A DNA stretch of 64,000 bases from Mytilus edulis (lineage: Eukaryota): NCBI RefSeq assembly GCF_963676685.1, contig NC_092347.1, forward strand, positions 18,662,001-18,726,000, written 5' to 3'. The position numbers and the translations under genes were made by a program. Shown here one piece after another: positions 2,187 through 62,616 of this stretch. The notes under the pieces were generated by a model. That model was not told the DNA's origin, did not search any database, and was given only the letters and a program-made list of their open reading frames with translations. Positions within the stretch are counted from its first letter, which is position 1; every line of letters begins with the position of its first letter.

Positions 2187-2230
2187 ACGCCAGACGCTCG
2201 TTTCGTCTACAAAAGACTCATCAGTGACGC
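2187..2230 (-). ncRNA. Type I hammerhead ribozyme (minimal stem III)
   Basis: Minus strand: GCGUCA-CUGAUGA-GUCU uuugu AGAC-GAAA-CGAGCG-UC/-UGGCGU; core and stems I and II intact. Confidence 0.8.
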
Positions 2231-2525
2231 TCGAATTCATAAAAGTTTAAAAGGCCAAATAAAGTTCGAAGTTGAAGAGCATTGAGGACCAAAATTCCAA
2301 AACGTTTTGCCAAATAGCGCTAAGGTAATATAATATATAATAATATATTAATATATAATATTAATTCATAAATATAACCATATCAATGATAATTCTTGTC
2401 AGCACAACAAATACTGACTACTGAACGTGTGCTACCCTTGGGGAAATAAATCTCTACCAGTAGTGGCATCGACTGAGTGGTTGTAAATAAACTCATCATA
2501 GATACCAGGGCTAAATTTTGTGTAT

Positions 2526-2569
2526 ACGCCAGACGCGCGTTTCGTCCACAAACAACTCATCAGTGACAC
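2526..2569 (-). ncRNA. Type I hammerhead ribozyme
   Basis: Minus strand: GUGUCA-CUGAUGA-GUU guuugug GAC-GAAA-CGCGCG-UC/-UGGCGU, with palindromic stem III ACGCGCGU. Confidence 0.78.
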
Positions 2570-4672: not shown

Positions 4673-6112
4673 GTAATTTACGTTTCAGTTCTTCTCTACA
4701 AATAATAAAAAACAATGTAAACATATTTTCATTGATTGGCTCACCAAGAAAATCATCCAAATCCGTTCGAATGCCACTTTTGCTAAATGAGTTCATATTT
4801 GGCACATTGGTGCACCTTAGTAATGTAAAAAAACACAAACATTTGTTTTGGGAAAATATTAAACCGATCTGGATTCTTTTTATGGCGCCATCTTTTAAAA
4901 GGAGAAATTGCTCGAAAATGACAAAAATAAGCCTTTTTTGCATATTTCGCTGGTTTAAATAAAAAAATATGGCAACATATATACTTTTTTGATAGTTGTA
5001 CCTAGTAAAACATCACTTTAAGTGTAAGAATGCATAGAAATAACAATGCTGTCTATTAAGTGCATGTATAATCTAACTGTTTCAATATGTCTTATTTAGC
5101 ATCATGTCAAAAATGGATGATTTTGGTCATCTTTCAGAGCCGAAATACTCCAAGATCAGGTTATTATTGTAAAATAACATATCTACTTGCAAAGTATAAC
5201 TATATATACACAATTCATGAAAATATTGAGCTCGGCAAATAATGTTGGTTTCTAGTATATGCCACAACAAAATGGGGTAGCCTGCACTTTCAAATTTTGT
5301 CAATTTTGCCGTCTCATTTGTAACATCTGACATATGATAAAATCTGTACTTATAAATAAGTATAACAACAGATGAATATTAAATGTTTCATTTAATACAT
5401 TAAAAGAATAATCATACATAAATACATACATTATTCATTATAAATCTATAGGCTTCAAGGAGCCGAAATAGTGCATTGACAAATTGTGCACTTAAAACAA
5501 CAAAAAACACATATTTTAAAAAACAAAAAAATTAAAAAAGTTAAACTCTTCAGAAAAAGTTCAGACTGTAAAAGAAAATTTCTTCTGACCATTTTTACAA
5601 TTTATTCTTATAATATATTAATATATAGCTGTCGGATAATAGCAGAAAAATGTGAAAATTTGTAAATTTACACATTGCAGGGACAATAGCTCTGACATAG
5701 ATGGTATGTCCAATTTTTCAGAAAATGTTTGGGTACTTGTCATGTTAATAGTTTATTATATATATATATAAATATATATATGTATGTATATGACCACTTG
5801 TTCTAAAGTTTTAAAAATAATGGTTTAAAAGAGAAAAGATAACTACTTAAATAAGTCTAACGCATAGTAATATACTTTAATTCATTCACGGACCTACTAA
5901 AATAAAGCTAACGCACAGTAGTATACTTAAATTCATTCACGGGTGTGTTCTAGTATATATTAGTTTTCAATTAAGACTTGTTTATACTTATTCGTTTAGG
6001 CTTGTATCATATTTTCCCTCCGGTTTATATGATCCGTTCATCCTATATTGACTCTTAAAATTCAAGAGTCTATATTGAATTGAGGGTGATTTTTATGCCG
6101 TTTCGATCCCCA

Positions 6113-6156
6113 ACATCGCTGAAGAGACATTTATTGTCGAAATCCGAATCTTGTGT
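6113..6156 (+). ncRNA. Type I hammerhead ribozyme, unit 1 (stems I and III weakened)
   Basis: ACAUCG-CUGAAGA-GACA uuuau UGUC-GAAA-UCCGAA-UC/-UUGUGU. Confidence 0.7.
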
Positions 6157-6656
6157 ACTAAAAAAAATAAAAACATATTGACAGTTCATGTTTGTAGCAT
6201 AACATCTTGGCCACAAGTTTTTTGTTTTCTGTTTAGCATTAAATTTATATTTAGATCCATTGTGTTACATCTTGTGATCAATTTTATTTGTCATTTGCCA
6301 ATGGCAGTCAGCAGGGTTAAAGAACATCAGTTGTTCGACCTGTTAGTCAATTGCGTTTTGTTTAATTATACTTTTTCTTTTTCACTTTTTTGGTCTTTTG
6401 GAAAATGTTGTTTGTGCTGTATTTTGACCCTTCTACAACGAAATTTGTTTTACATGAACACGTATAAAACCGCAATCATAGGTTTTTTAGCGTTGTTTTC
6501 AATTTAGACTTGTTTATATTTTTTCGTTTGGGCTTGTATCATATTTTCCCTCCGGTTTATATGATCCGTTCATCCTATATTGACTCTTAAAATTCAAGAG
6601 TCTATATTAAATTGGGGGTAAATATTATGGCCGTGCAAATACCGCTTCGATCCCTA

Positions 6657-6700
6657 ACATCACTGAAGAGACATTTATTGTCGAAATCCGGATCTTGTGT
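6657..6700 (+). ncRNA. Type I hammerhead ribozyme, unit 2
   Basis: ACAUCA-CUGAAGA-GACA uuuau UGUC-GAAA-UCCGGA-UC/-UUGUGU (one mismatch in stem I). Confidence 0.78.
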
Positions 6701-6987
6701 ACTAAAAAAAATAAAACAATATTGACACCTCATGTTTGTGGCATAACATCTTGGCCACAAGTTTTTTGTTTTCTGTTTAGTATTAAATTTATATTTAGAT
6801 CCATTGTGTTACATCTTGTGATCAATTTTATTTGGCAATCTCCAATTGTCAGAAGGGTTAAAGAACATCAGTTGTTCGATCTGTTACATGTAGTCAAATG
6901 CGTTTTGTTTAAATATACTTTTTCACTTTTTTGGACTTTTGGAAAATGTTGTTTGTGCTTTATTTAGATAGACCCTTCTACAACAAA

Positions 6988-7556
6988 AGGAATAGGTTCA
7001 GTAAGACCCCTTTTTGGCCCAGTTTTACAAAATTGTGAAAATGTAATCTTTTAGCTATTTACTTGAAAGTAGAATGCTTCCGCTACATGAATATTGGCTG
7101 TTTTTGACAATACAATGGACATATATCGGGTACTAGCATCATTAAGTCATGCTAAAGTACTGAAATCTTCATAAATTTAGCAGTTTAGTTAAATTTTAGA
7201 CGGTTTACGTCTTAAATGAAAGTGGTCGCATTCGTGTTCATTCATAATATTGAAATGTAAGTTGTATTTGATGATAATACATAACATATATAAAGGTTGA
7301 GGATGAACACGGATGCGGACACTTTCATTTTTGACAAACACCATACGAAAAGTGACGTTTTTTGGCATATTTGATAGATTTTGCATATTTAAGCTTGAAT
7401 CGGAGCGTTTTTAATTACTAAATCAGTAAAAATCTTTCACATAAACTAATTGAATCAACTGAAATAGACACTTAAGTGTTTAGAAAGTGTCCAAAATCTT
7501 TCTTTGGATGAACCTGAAATTTGAGGCCAAAATTAGCCCTTACCGGACAAACTCCT
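6988..7556. mobile_element. MITE (TIR aggagtaggtccggtaagg), copy 1
   Basis: Degenerate TIRs at both ends; close copy at 41467-42046; interrupts an HHR repeat unit. Confidence 0.8.
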
Positions 7557-7781
7557 TTGTTTTATATGCACACGTTTAAAAAATGCGGTTTTTATCCAAC
7601 GCAATCATAGGTTTAAACGTAGTTTTCAATTTAGACTTGTTTATATTTTTTCGTTTGGGCTTGTGTTATATTTTCCCTCCGGTCTTTATGATCCGTTCAT
7701 CCTATATTGACTCTTAAAATTCAAGTCTATATTAAATTGAGGGTAAATTTTATGGCCCTTCAAATACCGTTTCGATCCCTA

Positions 7782-7825
7782 ACATCACTGACGAGACATT
7801 TATTGTCGAAATCCGGATCTGGTGT
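7782..7825 (+). ncRNA. Type I hammerhead ribozyme, unit 3 (best preserved)
   Basis: ACAUCA-CUGACGA-GACA uuuau UGUC-GAAA-UCCGGA-UC/-UGGUGU; stem I fully paired, N7 varies as expected, stem III region AUCCGGAU is palindromic. Confidence 0.85.
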
Positions 7826-8179
7826 ACTAAAAAAAAATAAAAAAATATTGACACCTCATGTTTGTGGCATAACATCTTTGCCACAAGTTTATTGTTTTCT
7901 GTTTAGTATTAAATCTATATTAAGATCCATTTTGTTACATCTTGTGATCAATTTTATTTGGCAATCACTTATGGCAGTCAGCAGGGTTAAAGAACATCAG
8001 TTGTTCGACCTGTTAGTCAAATGCGTTTTGTTTAAATATACTCTTTCACTTTTTTGGTCTTTTGGAAAATGTTGTTTGTGCTGTATTTAAACCCTTCTAC
8101 AACGAAATTTGTTTTACATGCACACGTATAAAAATTATAGGTTTGAACGTAGTTTTCAATTTAGACTTGTATATATATA

Positions 8180-9199
8180 AAGGGGCTACAAACACAGAAA
8201 TATCAAAAAAAGCTTTCAGAAAGCGGAATCAATTCCCAGGAGTGAACTATTGGAATACAAAGTTAAAAAGAAAAATAAAAGGACTCCATGTGTTCTTACT
8301 TACCACCCATCTCTCAAAAACAGCTTTGGTGTCATTCGTGAGCATTGGAAATCAGTTGAAAAGAATTCCAAACTATCCAAGATTTTTCCCGAACCTCCAA
8401 TGATAGCTTTTAGGCAACCTAGTAGTCTGCGGAACCTGCTGGTGCGGGCTGAAGTGTCTGATAATAGAAGTACTCCTGGAGAATGTCGTTCGTGTGAAGA
8501 AAAACGCTGCAAATGCTGCCTACAGATGCAGCATTCATTAACATTTCACAGTAAGGCAACCGAAAACAACTATAAGATATTTTGCAATGTTACCTGCAAA
8601 AGTATGAATGTTATTTACATACTAGAATGTTCGGTTTGTGGCCTCCAATTTGTTTGTGAGTCAAAGCAGCCTTTCCACAAACGCCTCAATGGCCATAGGA
8701 GTGATATCTCTAAGAAGCCACTTCTCCCAGTTTCTCAGCACTTCAGACAGTCGGGTCACAAACCTGATGACTTTAACCGCATGAAAATTCTAGTGATTGA
8801 ACAGAATATTCACTGGAGTGATGCCCAGCGACAGGTTAGGGAAAGCTTTTGGATAAAGGAACTTAATGTACATCATCCAAACGGCATCAATAAGAAATAC
8901 TAGCGTTTTTGTTTTTTCACTCATTTTTATTGTTAATATACACAGTCACGTATATTGATTTATAGTGTTTTGTTTATATTATGATATTCAGGCTTTTGGA
9001 TTAAAAATCAATCGACCAAAACTTACCTGTATTATTACTGATCTATTTTTACACCTTATACATTATGTATCAGTATTGTTAAAACTTGTGACACTTGAAG
9101 AAGGCCATTTGTTGAGCCGAAATATTTGTCAGCACGATTTAATAACAACATTTTCGTATTATAACATCTTATATCAGTACCGTTGTGCAAATCTTTAGA

Positions 9200-9200
<1 letters not shown>
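8180..9200 (+). mobile_element. Penelope-like retroelement 3' fragment: GIY-YIG endonuclease ORF (8250-8903) plus pseudo-LTR
   Basis: Motifs PCVLTYHP, IFPEPPMIAFRQPSSLRNLLV, CxxC..RCKCC, NVIYILECSVCGLQFV, KRLNGHRS, VSQHF, RESFWIKEL, PNGIN. Flanked by (TA)n on both sides. Confidence 0.88.
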
Positions 9201-9240
<40 letters not shown>

Positions 9241-9320
9241 CCTATAAGAATCTACCAACCAGTAAACTTAATAGGTATTGGATCATCAAAATTGACAATA
9301 CTACACAAACAGGAAAAATT

Positions 9321-9675
9321 ATATTAGTCTGAAAGATTGTGTAACAATACCGATAAATAGATGGAAAACAAAACACTAAAAAGTGTTGAATATCATTGCA
9401 CAAAGATGGAAAAACTGAACAGATGATATAAATTATACAAAACTTACCTGTATTATTAGTGATCTATGTTTACACCTTATACATTATATCTCATTATTGT
9501 TAAAACTTTTGTCACCGAAGAAGGCCATTTGTTGAGCCGAAATATTTGCAATTATTGTATAATTTATATCATCTGTTCAGTTTTTCCATCTTTGTGCAAA
9601 TGATATTCAACACTTTTTAGTGTTTTGTTTTCCATCTATTTATCGGTATTGTTACACAATCTTTCAGACTAATAT
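9321..9675. repeat. ~120-bp inverted repeat enclosing a second copy of the Penelope pseudo-LTR segment
   Basis: 9321-9439 is the reverse complement of ~9555-9675; 9437-9548 repeats 9017-9128. Confidence 0.8.
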
Positions 9676-9705: not shown

Positions 9706-9868
9706 ACAACTCGTCTAAACACTAATCCAACAATGTTAGATCTGTAAATTTGCTTTCGCAAATTTTTGGTTCTTCCCTCGCCGGGATTCGAACCCATGAT
9801 ACTGTGATATCGTGACACCAAATCGCCTGCACTGCAGCCGTCCCGCTAGACCACACGACCACCTGGGC
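9706..9868 (-). mobile_element. tRNA-derived SINE
   Basis: Minus strand begins GCCCAGGTGGTCGTGTGGTCTAGCG (A box) and contains GGGTTCGAATCCC (B box); non-tRNA tail ends in (TA)n; no clean cloverleaf. Confidence 0.7.
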
Positions 9869-9869
9869 T

Positions 9870-10031
9870 ATATAAACAAGTCTAAATTGAAAACTACGTT
9901 CAAACCTATGATTGCGTTGGATATGAACCGCAATTTTTATACGTGGACATGTAAAACAAATTTCGTTTTAGAAGGGGTCTAAATATAGCACAAACAACAT
10001 TTTCCAAAATACCAAAAGAGTGAAAAAGTAT
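9870..10031 (-). repeat. Inverted partial copy of the 544-nt HHR repeat unit
   Basis: Reverse complement matches tatactttttcactc...gtagttttcaatttagacttgtttata of the array units. Confidence 0.8.
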
Positions 10032-11440
10032 ATAAATATATTCAGTATGGGTCTTGCTCATTGTTGAAGGCCATAAGGCATATGAAGACGTATAGCTTTA
10101 CTTCAATGTCATTTGTTCTCATTGGCAATCATACCACATTTGGTTTTATTCACCACTGACAGGAAATAAATTAGACAAATGTTAACGTAAGTCCCAATTG
10201 CAACATCTAATACATCTTGATACATTGTTAGATTTAGCATATTAGTTTAAAAACCAAAATAATGTATTTATTTTACATTGTTCTAGTCTTAAACATACAT
10301 GAACTATTTGCCATTGGACATTAGCAACAACCAACCAATTAATTAATCTTACAAGTGGAATATCTTCAAAAGAACAAAAAAAATCTCCCCCTTCTATATT
10401 TGAATAGGAATGTATGAATAGTTCATTAGTCATTGTTAGTTATTGAATTGAAATAGGAGCCGCCTAATATAGTAATACAAATCAAATAAGTAAAGTAATT
10501 TTCCAAGTTAACAAAGGCCTGTTCAATAAAACTGATGTATAACATGTATAATTATGTTATTATATACTTTGTATGATTCCCATATACAATGTATTATACA
10601 AACAGTTAAATAAATATATAAGTGAATAATTTCATACCAATATCTTCTTCTTTATATTGTATGTAGCATGTTTAGTTTGACCTGGCTATTGTCACTTTCA
10701 CAAAAAAATCATCTTGGTAGTGCCAGCTGGCATATAGCCCTACAAATAGAAAGTGTGAAACTATAAAATTATTCTTCAATTTTGTTTTTTTATGAAATAA
10801 AATATATCAGACAGGAAATTTAGGGTTGTGAACATGTAGCATCACTGTTTATGTAGTTTAATGTACATTTCTTTCTTTTAAAAAGGACACTATAAGTAAT
10901 CTACATGTGCAAATGTAGGGTCCTGAAATAGAACTTTGCAAAACTTTGGAAACTTTTGTTTTTTTGTTGCCTCCATGGCCTACAAGAATAATTAGTTCAC
11001 TAAGAAAGTTTATTCTCTGCATAAAGTTGTCTAGTTATACATGTACAGTATTTTGTATGTTGTATGTACAACATTTAACAGTTTTTTCAGTAGACAAAGA
11101 GCTAAATAACCTCCAGTTAGAACTGAAAATATAACGTAGGGGAAGAAAATAAAAACCTGACCTGCTAAATATTGAATATGTTGAAATAAATTTTGATTAT
11201 TATGGTTTTAAGCAGGAAAGAAATATATTGTTCCATGGTTAATTGCTTGAAAATCAAAATTCTGTCCTTAGCTGACAAGGACATAAATATTTTGACCCTC
11301 CCCCTTGCTTTTTTATATTCAAATGGTCCAAAGACAGAAAATGTATATAATAGATATAAATTTTGAAAAATAAGATCTGTTCCTACTGGAGTAACTCGTC
11401 ATATGGCTGTATACATCCTGTTATGAAATGGTGAAAAGCC

Positions 11441-34689: not shown

Positions 34690-35148
34690 GGTTATCAAAG
34701 GTACCAGGATTATAATTTAGTACGCCAGATGCGCGTTCCGTCTACATAAGACTCATCAGTGACGCTCATATCAAAATATTTATAAAGCCAAACAATTACA
34801 AAGTTGAAGAGCATTGAGGATCCAAAATTCCAAAAAGTTGTGCCAAATATGGCTAAGGAAATCTATGCCTGGAATAAGAAAATCCTTAGTTTTTCGAAAA
34901 ATTTAAACTTTTGTTTACAAAAAAAAAAAATGACCACACTACTGATATTCATGTCAACACCGAAGTGTTGACTACTGGGCTGGTGATACCCTCGGGGACG
35001 AAACGTCCACCAGCAGTGGCATCGACCCTGTGGTGTAAATAGTTATCAAAGGTACCAGGATTATAATTTAGTACGCCAGACGCGCGTTTCGTCTACATAA
35101 GACTCATCACTGACGCTCATATCAAAATATTTATAAAGCCAAACAATT
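34690..35148 (-). mobile_element. Tandem hammerhead repeat (retrozyme-like), 351-nt unit; both HHR cores carry point mutations
   Basis: Direct repeat gttatcaaaggtaccagg... at 34691 and 35042. HHR motifs at 34722-34765 (GAAA to GGAA) and 35073-35116 (CUGAUGA to GUGAUGA). Confidence 0.82.
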
Positions 35149-37710: not shown

Positions 37711-39024
37711 AAGTCCTGCGCTGAAGATGTGTAAAGTCTAGCGCTGGAGATGTAAAGTCTAGCGCTTGAGATGTAAAGTCTAGCGCTGGAGATGTAAAGT
37801 CCAGCGCTGAAGATGTAAAGTCTAGCGCTTGAGATGTAAAATCCAGCGCTTGAGATCTAAAGTCTAGGGCTTGAGATGTAAAGTCAAGCGTTGAAGATGT
37901 AAAGTCTAGCGCTGGGGATGTAAAGTCCAGCACTGGAGATGTGTAAAATCTAGCGCTGGAGATGTGTAAAATCTAGCGCTGGAGATATGCAAAGTCTAGC
38001 GCTGGAGATGTAAAGTCAAGCGCTGGAGATGTAAAGTTAAGCGCTGGAGATGTAACGTCAAGCGCTGGAGATATGCAAAGTCTAGCGCTGGAGATGTAAA
38101 GTCAAGCGCTGGAGATTTAAAGTCTTGCGCTGAAGATGTAAAGTCAAGCGCTGGAGATGTAAAGTCAAACGTTGGAGATGCAAAGTCTAGCGCTGGAGAT
38201 GTAAAGTCAAGCGCTGGTGATTTAAAGTCTTGCGCTGAAGATGTAAAGTCAAGCGCTGGAGATGTAAAGTCAAGCGTTGGAGATGTAAAGTCAAGCGCTG
38301 GAGATGTAAAGTCAAGCGCTGGAGATGTAAAGTCAAGCACTGGAGATGTAAAATCTCGACCATCGAGGCCGGCAAACTATAACCTCGGTGAAAAAAATTT
38401 ACGTGGGTGAAGATTTCATCGGGAAGCCGAACGTAAGACCCGTGCGGTCACCGCGGGTTTCTCGACCATCGAATGCCGGCAAAGTATACCTTGGAAAAAG
38501 AAAAAAATTACTACCGCGGGTTTCGAGGAGAAACTACACCTTTGGTAAAAAAATATTACATGGTGAAAAATTTTCATCGGGTAGCCGCACGTAAGAATAT
38601 TGCAGGTCTCTCGATGACAATGGCACCGTCAACGAAGGCAGGCATTGTATACCCTCGTAAGCTGCCTCTTGACGATGCACGTTCTAACCCTAACCCTAAA
38701 CCCTAACCCATCACCGTCGACCTCGATGGTCGAGATTTTACATCTCCAGCGCTGGACTTTACATCTCCAGCGCTGGATTTTACATCTCCAGCGCTGGACT
38801 TTACATCTCCAGCGCTGGACTTTACATCTCCAGCGCTTGACTTTACATCTTCAGCGCTAGACTTTACATCTCCAGCGCTTGATTTTACATCTCCAGCGCT
38901 AGACTTTGCATATCTCCAGCGCTTGACTTTACATCTCCAGCGCTTAACTTTACATCTCCAGCGCTTGACTTTACATCTCCAGCGCTAGACTTTGCATATC
39001 TCCAGCGCTAGATTTTACACATCT
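37711..39024. mobile_element. Foldback-like element: inverted arrays of a 21-bp repeat around a ~370-bp core
   Basis: (gcgctggagatgtaaagtcaa)n at 37711-38355; reverse-complement array at 38735-39024; inner inverted repeat ctcgaccatcgagg / cctcgatggtcgag. Confidence 0.8.
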
Positions 39025-45344: not shown

Positions 45345-45625
45345 ATAATACTAAATTTAGTATATACGCCAGACGAGCATTTCATCTACAAAAGACTCAT
45401 CAGTGACGCTCGAATCCAAAACAGTTAAAAAGGCAAAATAAAGTACGAAGTTGAAGAGCATTGAGAACTAAAATTCTTAAAAGTTTTGCCAAATACAGCT
45501 AAGGTGATTTATGCCTGAGCAACCACGTACTAAAGGACCGCGATTTTGCAGATGTATTCTAGTGTATGGTTAAATTGTGGAAAATAAACTCATCATAGAT
45601 ACCAGGATTTGATTTTGTATTGACG
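45345..45625 (-). repeat. Decayed HHR-repeat remnant (motif 45366-45409)
   Basis: Same family as 2150-2715; stems II and III mutated. Confidence 0.7.
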
Positions 45626-61249: not shown

Positions 61250-61864
61250 ATATATTATTCTTAACATGTGTTATCTCTTATTAATCATCCAAACTATCAC
61301 ACAAAACCTAAGAAGAACTATTTGAAAAAAAAAGAAACATTCGAACCTTGCCCCGCCTCCTGTTTTTAAGTTATAAAGTTCACTGTTAGAGAAGCTGACT
61401 GTTTTGTTAGACAAGTTATGAATACATTGAATTAAGAACTCTCTTTAAAGACATAGCTGAGTGAAACAACATCTAAATATATAAAATCATAACTCTACAC
61501 AAATGTGTATACCTTTAAGATTCATCTTTATGAACTCCATTTAAACTTATAGTAACATAAAAATTATAATGTAACCTACTCGCACCCGTAGATTAAACTA
61601 TTCTTAACTGTCAATTATTTAACACATCACATGAGACAAACTGCTCTAAATCACAGATCACAGGCACTTGTTACAGAATAAAACTTTCCTTTGTTCCACC
61701 TTAATATACCATTAAGGTATTTTGGGGGAAATATTCTGAAACAAGTGACTATGTCACAGAAAAAGCATCTTCCCAGTTTTCATGAAATTGCTCTCTATTA
61801 AAGCCATATCCTGGAAATTATGAAAAAAACAGGCTGGTACAGGATTGGGGAAATGTTCGTAAAT

Positions 61865-62616
61865 GTCGCCAACGTCGCCAACATTCTGAACAGTACCCGG
61901 TTCGCCAACGTCGCCAACGTCGCCAACATTTTGAACAGTACCCCTGTTCGCCAACGTCGCCAACGTCGCCAACATTCTAACCTGTTCACCAATTCGTCGC
62001 CAACATTCTAACCAGTACCCCTGTTCGCCAACGTCGCCAACGTCGCCAACATTCTAACCAGAACCCCTGTTCGCCAACGTCGCCAACGTCGCCAACATTC
62101 TAACCAGTACCCCTGTTCGCCAACGTCGCCAACGTCGCCAACATTCTAACCAGAACCCCTGTTCGCCAACGTCGCCAACATTTTAACCAATACCCCTGTT
62201 CGCCAACGTCGCCAACGTCGCCAACATTCTTACCAGTATCCCTGTTCGCCAACGTCGCCAACATTCTAACCAGTACCCCTGTTCGCCAACGTCGCCAACA
62301 TTCTAACCAGAACCCCTGTTCGCCAACGTCGCCAACGTCGCCAACATTTTAACCAGTACCCCTGTTCGCCAACGTCGCCAACGTCGCCAACATTCTTACC
62401 AGTATCCCTGTTCGCCAACGTCGCCAACGTCGCCAACATTCTAACCAGTACCTCTGTTCGGCAACGTCGCCAACGTCGCCAACATTCTAACCTGAGTACC
62501 CCTGTTCGGCAACGTCGCCAACGTCGCTAACATTCTGAACAGTACCCCTGTTTGCCAACATTCTAACCCATACCCCTGTCGCCAACATTCTTAACAGTAC
62601 CCCTGTAACAGGGGTA
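61865..62616. repeat. Satellite of 46/37-bp units built from a 9-bp subrepeat (cgccaacgt), ending in a palindrome
   Basis: (gtacccctgtt[cgccaacgt]1-2 cgccaacattctaacca)n; tacccctgt-a-acaggggta at 62598-62616. Confidence 0.9.

What the first reader, a model, noticed from the sequence alone, without database searches (positions are those of the whole stretch)
5962..8170. 544-nt tandem hammerhead-ribozyme array: candidate new retrozyme/circRNA family
Seen: three units, each with CUGANGA, stem II (GACA/UGUC), GAAA, a short palindromic stem III (AUCCGGAU), a UC cleavage site and a closing stem I. The first two cut sites are exactly 544 nt apart (6150, 6694). Established: tandem minimal type-I HHRs with palindromic stem III define non-LTR retrozymes, which self-cleave (often as dimers) to monomers that circularise and are thought to be mobilised by Penelope-like elements. 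Inference: this unit is unrelated in sequence to, and much longer than, the ~340-350-nt family also present here, so it may be an undescribed family yielding a ~544-nt circRNA.
Basis: partly seen in the sequence, partly recalled or inferred. Interest (0 to 1): 0.82.

Follow-up and report, generated by a model that had tools for sequence, protein, structure and literature searches.

The report
Decayed copy of a 546-nt mussel retrozyme
The three hammerhead-ribozyme motifs are real and belong to an abundant ~546-base mobile repeat of a mussel-type genome that I could not find described, but it is one more family of an already known kind (non-LTR retrozymes), this copy is old and damaged, and neither self-cutting nor RNA circles are shown.

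Summary
Observation confirmed with corrections. Three 32-nt type-I hammerhead (HHR) motifs lie on the + strand, with cut sites at 6150, 6694 and 7819. The array (5961-8176) is a decayed 3.4-unit copy: HHR1 has a broken helix III, HHR1 and HHR2 have a helix-I mismatch, and unit 2 carries a 567-nt foreign repeat.

- **Family size:** the unit consensus is 546 nt, with about 5,400 HHR copies in the genome.
- **Relation to other families:** it shares only the HHR with a ~350-nt sister family and with the published Mytilus retrozyme.
- **HHR fold:** compensatory changes across the three families support it.
- **Insertion signature:** arrays have scattered 5' starts and one fixed 3' end. At least 1,149 copies of that end run straight into (TA)n. 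This fits target-primed reverse transcription by (TA)n-targeting Penelope-like elements.
- **RNA:** public reads show strand-biased, unit-wide, head-to-tail RNA, but no read ends at the cut site. Cleavage and circularity are therefore unproven.
- **Rfam:** it reports no hammerhead here.

The scan had already reported other retrozyme families in this genome on other DNA. It had not reported this one, apart from this same stretch.

Verdict: new member of a known kind, of moderate interest.

The parts
5961..8176 (+). Whole array of the 546-nt family. It is 3.4 units long, from consensus position 343 to position 369, and is 86-93% identical to the family consensus.
   Evidence: BLAST of the 33-unit consensus against the window; direct repeats spaced 544 and 1125-1127 nt.
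5961..6150 (+). 5'-truncated first unit (consensus 343-546). It is preceded by the TA-rich GTATATAT at 5953-5960.
6119..6150 (+). HHR1. The core is intact. Helix III is broken (ATCCGAAT) and helix I has a C.U mismatch, so it is probably inactive.
6151..6694 (+). Full unit from cut site to cut site, 544 nt. It was the most diverged of the 33 units sampled (68 differences from the consensus).
6663..6694 (+). HHR2. Core, helix II and helix III are intact. Helix I has a C.U mismatch at 2.2-1.2 (TTGTGT in place of TGGTGT).
6695..6988 (+). Unit 2, first part (consensus 1-278).
6989..7555 (+). Secondary insertion: a full-length copy of an unrelated ~578-nt dispersed repeat (4,361 first-look candidates, ~90% identity). 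Its internal inverted repeat at 7204-7337 explains the weak MIR161 look-alike hit.
7556..7819 (+). Unit 2, second part (consensus 279-546).
7788..7819 (+). HHR3, the only fully intact motif here. N7 is C, helix I is a perfect 6 bp, and helix III is the palindrome ATCCGGAT.
7820..8176 (+). Last, partial unit (consensus 1-369). It ends at the family's fixed 3' terminus ...TTCAATTTAGACTTGTATATAT, in a short (TA)n.
8180..9202 (+). 5'-truncated copy of a young element that encodes a GIY-YIG-like protein (ORF 8250-8903), inserted in the (TA)n at the array's 3' end. Its own 3' end, ...CTTTAGACTGA, is followed by (TA)17 at 9203-9237. It is a candidate for the kind of autonomous Penelope-like partner, but it is not part of the retrozyme.
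   Evidence: Pfam gave no hit.
9870..10033 (-). Second, inverted, 5'-truncated insertion of the same 546-nt family (consensus 207-369, 94% identity). Its 3' end faces the main array across the (TA)n nest.

Best explanation
The stretch is an old, decayed insertion of a non-coding, non-autonomous retroelement of the non-LTR retrozyme kind, in a Mytilus-type mussel genome. The family unit is about 546 nt and carries one canonical metazoan type-I hammerhead: helix I of 6 bp, helix II of 4 bp, and helix III reduced to the palindrome AUCCGGAU.

Proposed life cycle:
1. Arrays are transcribed. There is no Pol III box and there are several T-runs, so transcription is probably Pol II read-through (inferred).
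2. Two neighbouring hammerheads pair through the palindrome into a double hammerhead and cut after C17. This releases unit-length RNA that may be ligated into circles (inferred; not shown).
3. A Penelope-like reverse transcriptase/GIY-YIG endonuclease nicks a (TA)n microsatellite. The TA 3' end anneals to the UUUAUAU at consensus positions 363-369 and primes cDNA synthesis.
4. Synthesis runs round the circle, or along a multimer, for one to several turns and stops at random.

This gives arrays with one fixed 3' end in (TA)n, scattered 5' starts and near-identical units. The insertion signature is shown. The priming detail and the partner are inferred.

The copy in this window has since lost two of its three ribozymes and taken in a foreign repeat. 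It is a fossil, not a source of a 544-nt circle.
For: **Motif and family**
- Three motifs sit at the stated places.
- The HHR 32-mer occurs 5,388 times in the genome and 0 times in the reversed control.
- 33 full units are 540-559 nt long (two shorter, 516 nt), with a 546-nt consensus and 93% mean pairwise identity.

**Ribozyme fold**
- The alignment holds 41 distinct HHRs from three families.
- 95.5% of cells are paired, and 8 of 14 pairs change on both sides.
- The covariation score is 0.239 against 0.121 when shuffled (0 of 500 shuffles reach it). Slid controls give 14-41% paired.
- Helix III changes CCGG to CUAG within the family and to GCGC in the sister family. Both keep the palindrome.
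- The 546-nt and ~350-nt families share nothing but the HHR plus helix I, at 88% over 52 nt.
- Co-folding two copies gives the double hammerhead at -26.3 kcal/mol against 2 x -9.1 kcal/mol for monomers.

**Retrotransposition signature**
- 11 of 19 sampled arrays end at unit position 363-371, counted from the cut site of the window's own 544-nt unit. Most of these run straight into (TA)n. Their 5' starts are scattered and often sit in TA-rich sequence.
- Genome-wide, the junction of the 3' end with (TA)n occurs 1,149 times. The internal continuation occurs 1,275 times. Both controls give 0.
- Units within an array are mostly 97-99.4% identical (one array 93.6%), against 93.4% between arrays.
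- Preference for (TA)n is published for Naiad and Neptune Penelope-like elements (PMC8557442).
- A young GIY-YIG element with the PLE-typical inverted head-to-head pairs ends in the same TTTAGACT box before (TA)n.

**Composition**
- There is no ORF and no A/B box, and GC is 33%.

**RNA**
- In raw-read run X21, depth is 125-410x across the whole unit on one strand, against 16-129x on the other.
- 223 reads cross head-to-tail.
- No loose end into the (TA)n flank is listed for X21 (the listing is cut off, so about 48 reads at most). In X24, 38 reads do this at a depth of about 70.
- The family is present in runs under four organism labels from 10 studies.
Against: - No cleavage is seen. No pile-up of read starts or ends occurs at the cut site in either raw RNA run (table 6).
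- Head-to-tail reads are expected equally from uncut multimeric transcripts of genomic arrays.
- Rfam's hammerhead models do not report the motif even at E<=10. They also miss the published mussel hammerhead in this window at gathering score.
- Within the family, the HHR is no better conserved than the rest of the unit: 96.4% against 95.5%, rank 315 of 546 windows.
- The predicted circular fold is only marginally more stable than shuffles (z = -1.7, 56% paired). The 'highly self-paired' trait is therefore weak.
- The partner element is not identified. The neighbouring GIY-YIG fragment has no Pfam hit, its reverse transcriptase part was not seen, and it is not linked to other arrays.
- High within-array identity could also come from unequal crossing-over or gene conversion.
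Confidence: 0.78

Rival explanations
1. It is an ordinary dispersed minisatellite or satellite that grows by DNA-level processes such as unequal crossing-over or replication slippage. The hammerhead is an inherited relic with no present role, and the RNA is passive read-through.
For: - The HHR is no better conserved than the rest of the unit within the family.
- No read ends occur at the cut site.
- The fold z-score is weak.
- The X24 reads look proportional to copy number, come from both strands, and half of them run into (TA)n flanks.
Against: - More than 1,100 separate loci share one exact 3' terminus in (TA)n while their 5' starts scatter. DNA-level array growth does not produce this pattern.
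- The HHR is the only segment conserved between two otherwise unrelated families, and it changes by compensatory substitutions.
- X21 shows a 3-10-fold strand bias with even cover of the unit.
Confidence: 0.1
2. The repeat is not a stand-alone element. It is the pseudo-LTR or tail of an autonomous Penelope-like element, and the arrays are tandem solo terminal repeats left by PLE insertions.
For: - PLEs carry minimal type-I HHRs in their pseudo-LTRs and insert as partial tandems (PMC4209133; PMC8557442).
- Xenopus retrozymes are related to PLE pseudo-LTRs.
- In the window, a GIY-YIG ORF fragment follows the array in the same orientation.
Against: - The ORF-bearing sequence downstream is not found next to the other 29 sampled loci, apart from three weak scattered matches of which two are in the opposite orientation.
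- A genome search with the unit returned only arrays.
- The GIY-YIG element's 953 terminal bases share no similarity with the unit beyond about 10-28 nt at the very 3' end.
Confidence: 0.08
3. It is a Pol III-driven SINE-like element, like the tRNA-headed ~440-nt (TA)n-targeting repeat of the same genome. In that case the hammerhead is incidental.
For: It shares (TA)n targeting and a TTTAGAC 3' box with the tRNA-derived element at 9707-9868 on the minus strand.
Against: - The unit has no A/B boxes and no tRNA-like part.
- It has four runs of five or six T on the sense strand, which would terminate Pol III.
Confidence: 0.03

Closest known systems
Non-LTR retrozymes of metazoans (Cervera & de la Pena 2020, NAR, PMC7229834; review PMC7761336)
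   Same: - Tandem, non-coding, low-GC repeats, each with one type-I hammerhead.
- Dispersed in thousands of copies.
- Transcribed.
- Co-occur with Penelope-like elements.
   Different: - The unit is 546 nt, against 170-400 nt reported for invertebrates and 350-390 nt for the mussel.
- The circular RNA, the defining product, is not shown here.
- The predicted fold is only weakly stable.
- This family shows a precise 3' terminus in (TA)n. The 2020 review said no conserved motif pointed to a partner.
Published Mytilus galloprovincialis retrozyme (construct Mg353; HHR A/B)
   Same: - Same genome type. Copies of that family lie in this window at 2193-2563, 34728-35103 and 45372-45403 on the minus strand.
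- Same HHR architecture (6-bp helix I, 4-bp helix II, palindromic loop-less helix III).
   Different: - No sequence similarity outside the HHR: 71% over 52 nt, E = 0.007.
- Helices II and III have different sequences.
- The unit is about 200 nt longer.
~350-nt sister family found here (HHR CUGAAGAGACAUGUAUUGUCGAAAUGCGCAUC; 6,096 genome hits)
   Same: The hammerhead is nearly identical (28 of 32 nt) and helix I is the same. The differences are in loop 2 and in compensatory helix III and helix I pairs.
   Different: The body is unrelated to the 546-nt unit. It is 66-75% similar to the published Mg353 type instead.
Minimal dimer-dependent hammerheads of newt satellite 2 and of Penelope-like elements (Forster 1988; Cervera & de la Pena 2014, PMC4209133)
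   Same: - A short palindromic helix III that cannot close as a hairpin.
- The predicted active form is a double hammerhead between tandem copies.
   Different: PLE min-HHRs typically have a long helix II (7-8 bp), a short helix I and often no helix III. This one has the canonical 6/4-bp layout and is not inside a coding element.
(TA)n-targeting Penelope-like elements (Naiad, Neptune; Craig et al. 2021, PMC8557442)
   Same: - Insertion bias for (TA)n.
- 5' truncation and tandem insertions.
- Nesting with other such elements.
   Different: - The retrozyme encodes nothing.
- Which PLE clade mobilises it is unknown.
- I found no similarity to the 60-nt region that earlier notes call the Naiad leader hairpin in the smaller retrozymes, but I did not test that hairpin directly.

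Membership tests
Hammerhead ribozyme, type I | Catalytic core C3-U4-G5-A6-N7-G8-A9 ... G12-A13-A14, the A15.1-U16.1 pair and H17 at the cut site. | tested here: met
   All three window motifs and 5,388 genome copies carry the core. In 41 distinct HHRs the columns CTGA.GA and GAAA were invariant, but those letters were required by the search pattern that picked the sequences. U16.1 was also invariant and was not required by the pattern.
Hammerhead ribozyme, type I | Three helices around the core, kept by compensatory change; open helix I, closed helix II. | tested here: met
   95.5% of cells are paired and 8 of 14 pairs change on both sides. The covariation score is above all 500 shuffles and all slid controls. 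Caveat: most double changes lie between three related families.
Hammerhead ribozyme, type I | Match to the curated Rfam covariance models (Hammerhead_1 and relatives). | tested here: not met
   No hammerhead hit at gathering score or at E<=10, on the window or on intact copies L013 and L010. The published mussel HHR in the same window is also missed at gathering score. I read this as the models coping poorly with a loop-less helix III.
Hammerhead ribozyme, type I | Site-specific self-cleavage. | tested here: inconclusive
   Neither raw RNA run shows enrichment of read ends at the predicted site. [quoted passage not shown] A bench assay is needed.
Non-LTR retrozyme | Tandem non-coding repeats, each with a type-I HHR; GC below 50%; no LTR, PBS or PPT. 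| tested here: met
   Arrays range from just over one unit to at least 7 units. GC is 33%. The longest open frame is 111 codons and there are no Pol III boxes. PBS and PPT were not searched for explicitly.
Non-LTR retrozyme | Accumulates as unit-length circular RNA. | tested here: inconclusive
   Strand-biased RNA covers the unit evenly, and 223 head-to-tail reads were found in X21. Short reads cannot separate circles from multimers of a tandem array.
Non-LTR retrozyme | Stable, highly self-paired predicted circle. | tested here: inconclusive
   The circular MFE is -110.4 kcal/mol, z = -1.7 against 100 dinucleotide shuffles, with 56% paired. The ~350-nt sister family gives z = -2.0.
Non-LTR retrozyme | Spread by retrotransposition (dispersed copies, retro-type insertion ends). 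| tested here: met
   One fixed 3' end and variable 5' ends. There are 1,149 junctions of the 3' end with (TA)n in the genome and 0 in the control.
Published Mytilus retrozyme family (Mg353, HHR A/B) | Sequence homology of the unit; unit size 350-390 bp. | tested here: not met
   Only the HHR aligns, at 71% over 52 nt. The unit is 546 nt. The published primer sequence matches the other family in the window.
Penelope-like element pseudo-LTR | The repeat flanks, or is continuous with, an RT/GIY-YIG ORF. | tested here: not met
   The downstream ORF-bearing sequence is absent from the other sampled arrays. Genome hits to the unit are arrays only.

The most novel reading that the evidence does not exclude
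The 546-nt family is an undescribed, recently active retrozyme whose circular RNA is reverse-transcribed by rolling circle from one defined internal origin. That origin is the UUUAUAU at positions 363-369, annealed to a nicked (TA)n. The enzyme would be a (TA)n-targeting GIY-YIG Penelope-like element that shares the terminal TTTAGAC-N(1-7)-(TA)n box. This would give metazoan retrozymes their first mapped origin of reverse transcription and a named partner.
Probability: 0.3. Interest if true: 0.6.

Novelty: new member of a known kind. Interest (0 to 1): 0.38.

Why it matters
Retrozymes are the only known genome-encoded circular RNAs with ribozymes in animals. How they are copied back into DNA, and by which enzyme, is still open. 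The 2020 review states that no conserved motif points to a partner.

This family adds three things:
- A third major hammerhead lineage in mussels, about as abundant as the published ones. Its ribozyme module has been swapped between unrelated bodies.
- A clean genome-wide insertion signature: one 3' terminus in (TA)n at more than 1,100 loci, with scattered 5' starts.
- Near-identical units within arrays, as expected from target-primed, multi-turn reverse transcription by a (TA)n-specific Penelope-like element.

The specific locus in the window is a dead copy and has no importance of its own.

Tried and rejected
- **Rfam scans.** Scans at gathering score and at E<=10 found no hammerhead. The only notable hit, MIR161 at 7204-7337, is the inverted repeat inside the foreign 567-nt insertion.
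- **Tandem Repeats Finder.** It misses the array because the period exceeds 500.
- **Core conservation within the family.** The core is not better conserved than the flanks: 96.4% against 95.5%. I treat this as uninformative, because inserted copies decay neutrally.
- **Coding or rolling-circle translation.** Rejected: every frame has many stops, although 546 is a multiple of 3.
- **Pol III/tRNA head.** Rejected.
- **Linkage to the downstream GIY-YIG ORF.** Rejected as a general feature.
- **Leader hairpin lead.** Earlier notes describe a Naiad-type leader hairpin in the smaller retrozymes. I found no sequence similarity between the 546-nt unit and the region conserved between the 340- and 350-nt families. 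I did not test the hairpin claim itself.
- **Wider array sample.** I replaced it with genome-wide pattern counts.
- **Read ends at the cut site.** None found.
- **Pfam on the neighbouring ORF.** No hit even at E<=10. Only the language-model atlas points to GIY-YIG.
- **Lunse et al. 2017.** The paper on dimeric PLE hammerheads is not held.
Full report
**What is there**

Reading 5700-8500 and a loose hammerhead pattern scan show three motifs on the + strand, at 6119-6150, 6663-6694 and 7788-7819.

Direct-repeat analysis and BLAST of a family consensus against the window define the array as 5961-8176:
- a 5'-truncated unit (consensus 343-546);
- one full 544-nt unit;
- a unit split at consensus 278/279 by a 567-nt insertion at 6989-7555;
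- a last partial unit ending at consensus 369.

The insertion is a full-length copy of an unrelated ~578-nt dispersed repeat with 4,361 first-look candidates. Its internal inverted repeat explains the spurious MIR161-like hit.

The copy is decayed. HHR1 has lost the helix III palindrome (AUCCGAAU). HHR1 and HHR2 have a C.U mismatch beside the cut site, because UUGUGU replaces the family's UGGUGU. Only HHR3 is intact. The 544-nt unit was the most diverged of the 33 units sampled.

**Is it more than chance?**

The loose pattern alone is not significant in the window: 36 matches against 13 +/- 11 expected. The specific 32-mer, with up to 3 mismatches, occurs 5,388 times in the 1.37-Gb genome. These split evenly between strands, and the reversed control gives none.

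A genome search with the unit found 2,242 first-look candidates. The best-scoring ones lie on many chromosome-sized contigs, in arrays from just over one unit to at least seven units. Thirty-three full units measure 540-559 nt (two shorter, 516 nt). They give a 546-nt consensus and are 93% identical on average.

**Is the hammerhead real?**

Rfam reports no hammerhead at gathering score, nor at E<=10, even on intact copies. It also misses, at gathering score, the published and experimentally active mussel hammerhead that lies in the same window. I therefore attribute the blank to the loop-less helix III.

Independent evidence is good:
- RNA reads and then a genome search revealed a sister family with a ~350-nt unit and 6,096 hits. 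Its hammerhead differs in 4 of 32 nt.
- The two families share nothing but the hammerhead plus helix I, at 88% over 52 nt.
- The sister family's body is instead 66-75% similar to the published Mytilus retrozyme type (PMC7229834 supplement; primer match).
- The differences are compensatory. Helix III reads AUCCGGAU, AUGCGCAU or, within the family, AUCUAGAU, and all three are palindromes. Helix I changes A-U to G-C. Helix II changes A-U to U-A in the published type.
- On 41 distinct hammerheads from three families, 95.5% of cells pair and 8 of 14 pairs change on both sides. The covariation score exceeds all 500 shuffles and all slid controls.
- Co-folding two copies gives the classical double hammerhead at -26.3 kcal/mol, against 2 x -9.1 kcal/mol for monomers that cannot form helix III. 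This matches the published view of metazoan type-I motifs (PMC4209133).

Within the 546-nt family the hammerhead is not better conserved than the rest: 96.4% against 95.5%. This is what neutral decay of dead copies predicts.

**How it spreads**

- Eleven of 19 sampled arrays end at unit position 363-371 (counted on the window's 544-nt unit; about consensus 369). The terminus reads ...TTCAATTTAGACT(C/T)GTTTATAT, and most of these ends run directly into (TA)n.
- Their 5' starts scatter over the unit and often follow TA-rich sequence.
- Genome-wide, the junction of the 3' end with (TA)n occurs 1,149 times. The internal unit-to-unit continuation occurs 1,275 times. The reversed controls give none.
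- One fixed 3' end and variable 5' ends are the mark of target-primed reverse transcription.
- (TA)n is the published preferred target of Naiad and, by hypothesis, Neptune Penelope-like elements (PMC8557442).
- Units within an array are mostly 97-99.4% identical (one array 93.6%), against 93.4% between arrays. Multi-turn copying of one RNA predicts this, but local homogenisation could also produce it.

In the window the same (TA)n tract has been hit repeatedly:
- the array itself;
- a 5'-truncated GIY-YIG-encoding element at 8180-9202;
- a small inverted element at 9240-9673 that shares that element's 3' UTR;
- a tRNA-derived element on the minus strand at 9707-9868;
- an inverted fragment of the 546-nt family at 9870-10033.

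Four of these element types end in a TTTAGAC-like box (TTTCAGAC in one of them) 1-8 nt before the TA run. I take this as a hint of a shared priming or recognition site.

The GIY-YIG element is young. It has at least 860 candidates, many of them 99% identical, and all reach the same 3' end. Seven pairs lie in the inverted head-to-head layout typical of Penelope-like elements. The protein atlas places its ORF with GIY-YIG clusters, while Pfam gives nothing. It is not linked to other arrays, so it is a neighbour and a candidate kind of partner. It is not part of the retrozyme.

**RNA**

The family is held by public runs under four organism labels from ten studies. I laid reads on a permuted near-consensus unit, L013:1217-1766, with the cut site at 1491/1492.
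- Raw-read run X21 shows 125-410x cover over the whole unit on one read direction, against 16-129x on the other. If this is a standard stranded library, the RNA is of hammerhead sense. DNA contamination cannot explain the asymmetry.
- 223 reads in X21 join the end of the unit to its start.
- No loose end into the (TA)n flank at the element's 3' terminus is listed for X21. The listing is cut off, so the number is about 48 reads at most. In the unstranded run X24, 38 reads do this at a depth of about 70.
- Much of the X21 RNA carries its own set of variants, including A instead of C at position 17. This suggests that a few source loci are expressed.
- No pile-up of read starts or ends occurs at the cut site.
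- Head-to-tail reads cannot separate circles from multimers. Transcription is therefore shown, but cleavage and circularity are not.

The predicted circle is only marginally more stable than shuffles, z = -1.7. The unit has no ORF and no Pol III boxes, and it has several T-runs.

**Comparison with what is known, and novelty**

The published mussel work describes about 5,000 hammerheads of two near-identical types, in 350-390-bp repeats (supplement). That family is the ~340-nt one in this window. The 546-nt unit shares only the ribozyme architecture with it.

No held paper contains this hammerhead string. I cannot exclude an entry in a repeat library such as Repbase.

Unit length is not exceptional for the class, since vertebrate families span 51-972 bp. 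Descent from, and dependence on, Penelope-like elements is already argued for Xenopus.

Other agents of this scan have reported the same signature, (TA)n targeting with a fixed end, for other families of this genome. I checked that signature independently for this family only.

I therefore class it as a new member of a known kind. The useful additions are the size of the family, the modular exchange of the ribozyme between unrelated bodies, and the sharply defined 3' terminus.

**Limits**

The array sample is about 22 independent loci plus pattern counts.
- The autonomous partner could not be recovered in full length.
- The species is inferred only as Mytilus-like, from the 14 chromosome-sized contigs and the match to published M. 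galloprovincialis retrozyme primers.

Noticed in passing
L031-L042 (for example L032:828-1532 on the minus strand); seen first as loose read ends at L013:1455 and 1496: A sister retrozyme family with a ~350-nt unit and the hammerhead CUGAAGAGACAUGUAUUGUCGAAAUGCGCAUC has 6,096 genome hits. Its body is 66-75% like the published Mytilus retrozyme, but its ribozyme is like that of the 546-nt family. The ribozyme module seems to have been exchanged between bodies.
   Followed up: partly
window 6989-7555: A full-length copy of an unrelated ~578-nt dispersed repeat (4,361 first-look candidates, ~90% identity) has an internal ~140-nt inverted repeat at 7204-7337. That repeat mimics a plant miRNA precursor in Rfam (MIR161, E = 6e-4, far below gathering score).
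   Followed up: partly
window 8180-9237: A 5'-truncated copy of a young GIY-YIG-encoding element carries ORF 8250-8903. Many genome copies are 99% identical, and seven pairs lie inverted head-to-head. It ends ...CTTTAGACTGA followed by (TA)17. Its 3' UTR at about 9085-9125 holds a hammerhead-like string with an off-consensus core (CUUGAAGA ... GAAAUA).
   Followed up: partly
window 9240-9673: A small element is built as an inverted pair, with arms at about 9290-9420 and 9555-9673. It shares ~110 nt with the GIY-YIG element's 3' UTR and ends ...CTTTCAGACTAATATGTATATAT in (TA)n. It looks like a non-autonomous derivative.
   Followed up: no
window 9707-9868, minus strand: A tRNA-derived SINE-like element has its T-arm GGTTCGAATCCCGGCGAGGG on the minus strand and ends ...GTTTAGACGAGTTGTATATAT in (TA)n. 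ARAGORN calls no tRNA there. The same element flanks 546-nt arrays in L002, L003 and L030.
   Followed up: partly
window 2193-2563, 34728-35103 and 45372-45403, minus strand: Copies of the published Mytilus retrozyme type lie here. The published primer GTCTTTTGTAGACGAAACGCGCGTC matches with 1-3 mismatches.
   Followed up: partly
window 37730-38356 and 38737-39019: Two 21-nt minisatellite arrays, of about 30 and 13 copies, have units that are reverse complements of each other. Together they form a large inverted repeat about 380 nt apart.
   Followed up: no
window 61854-62606: A 46/83-nt satellite built on the 9-mer TCGCCAACG has strong negative GC skew.
   Followed up: no
window 5843-5942: Two tandem copies of a 51-nt unit lie directly upstream of the array's 5' junction.
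   Followed up: no
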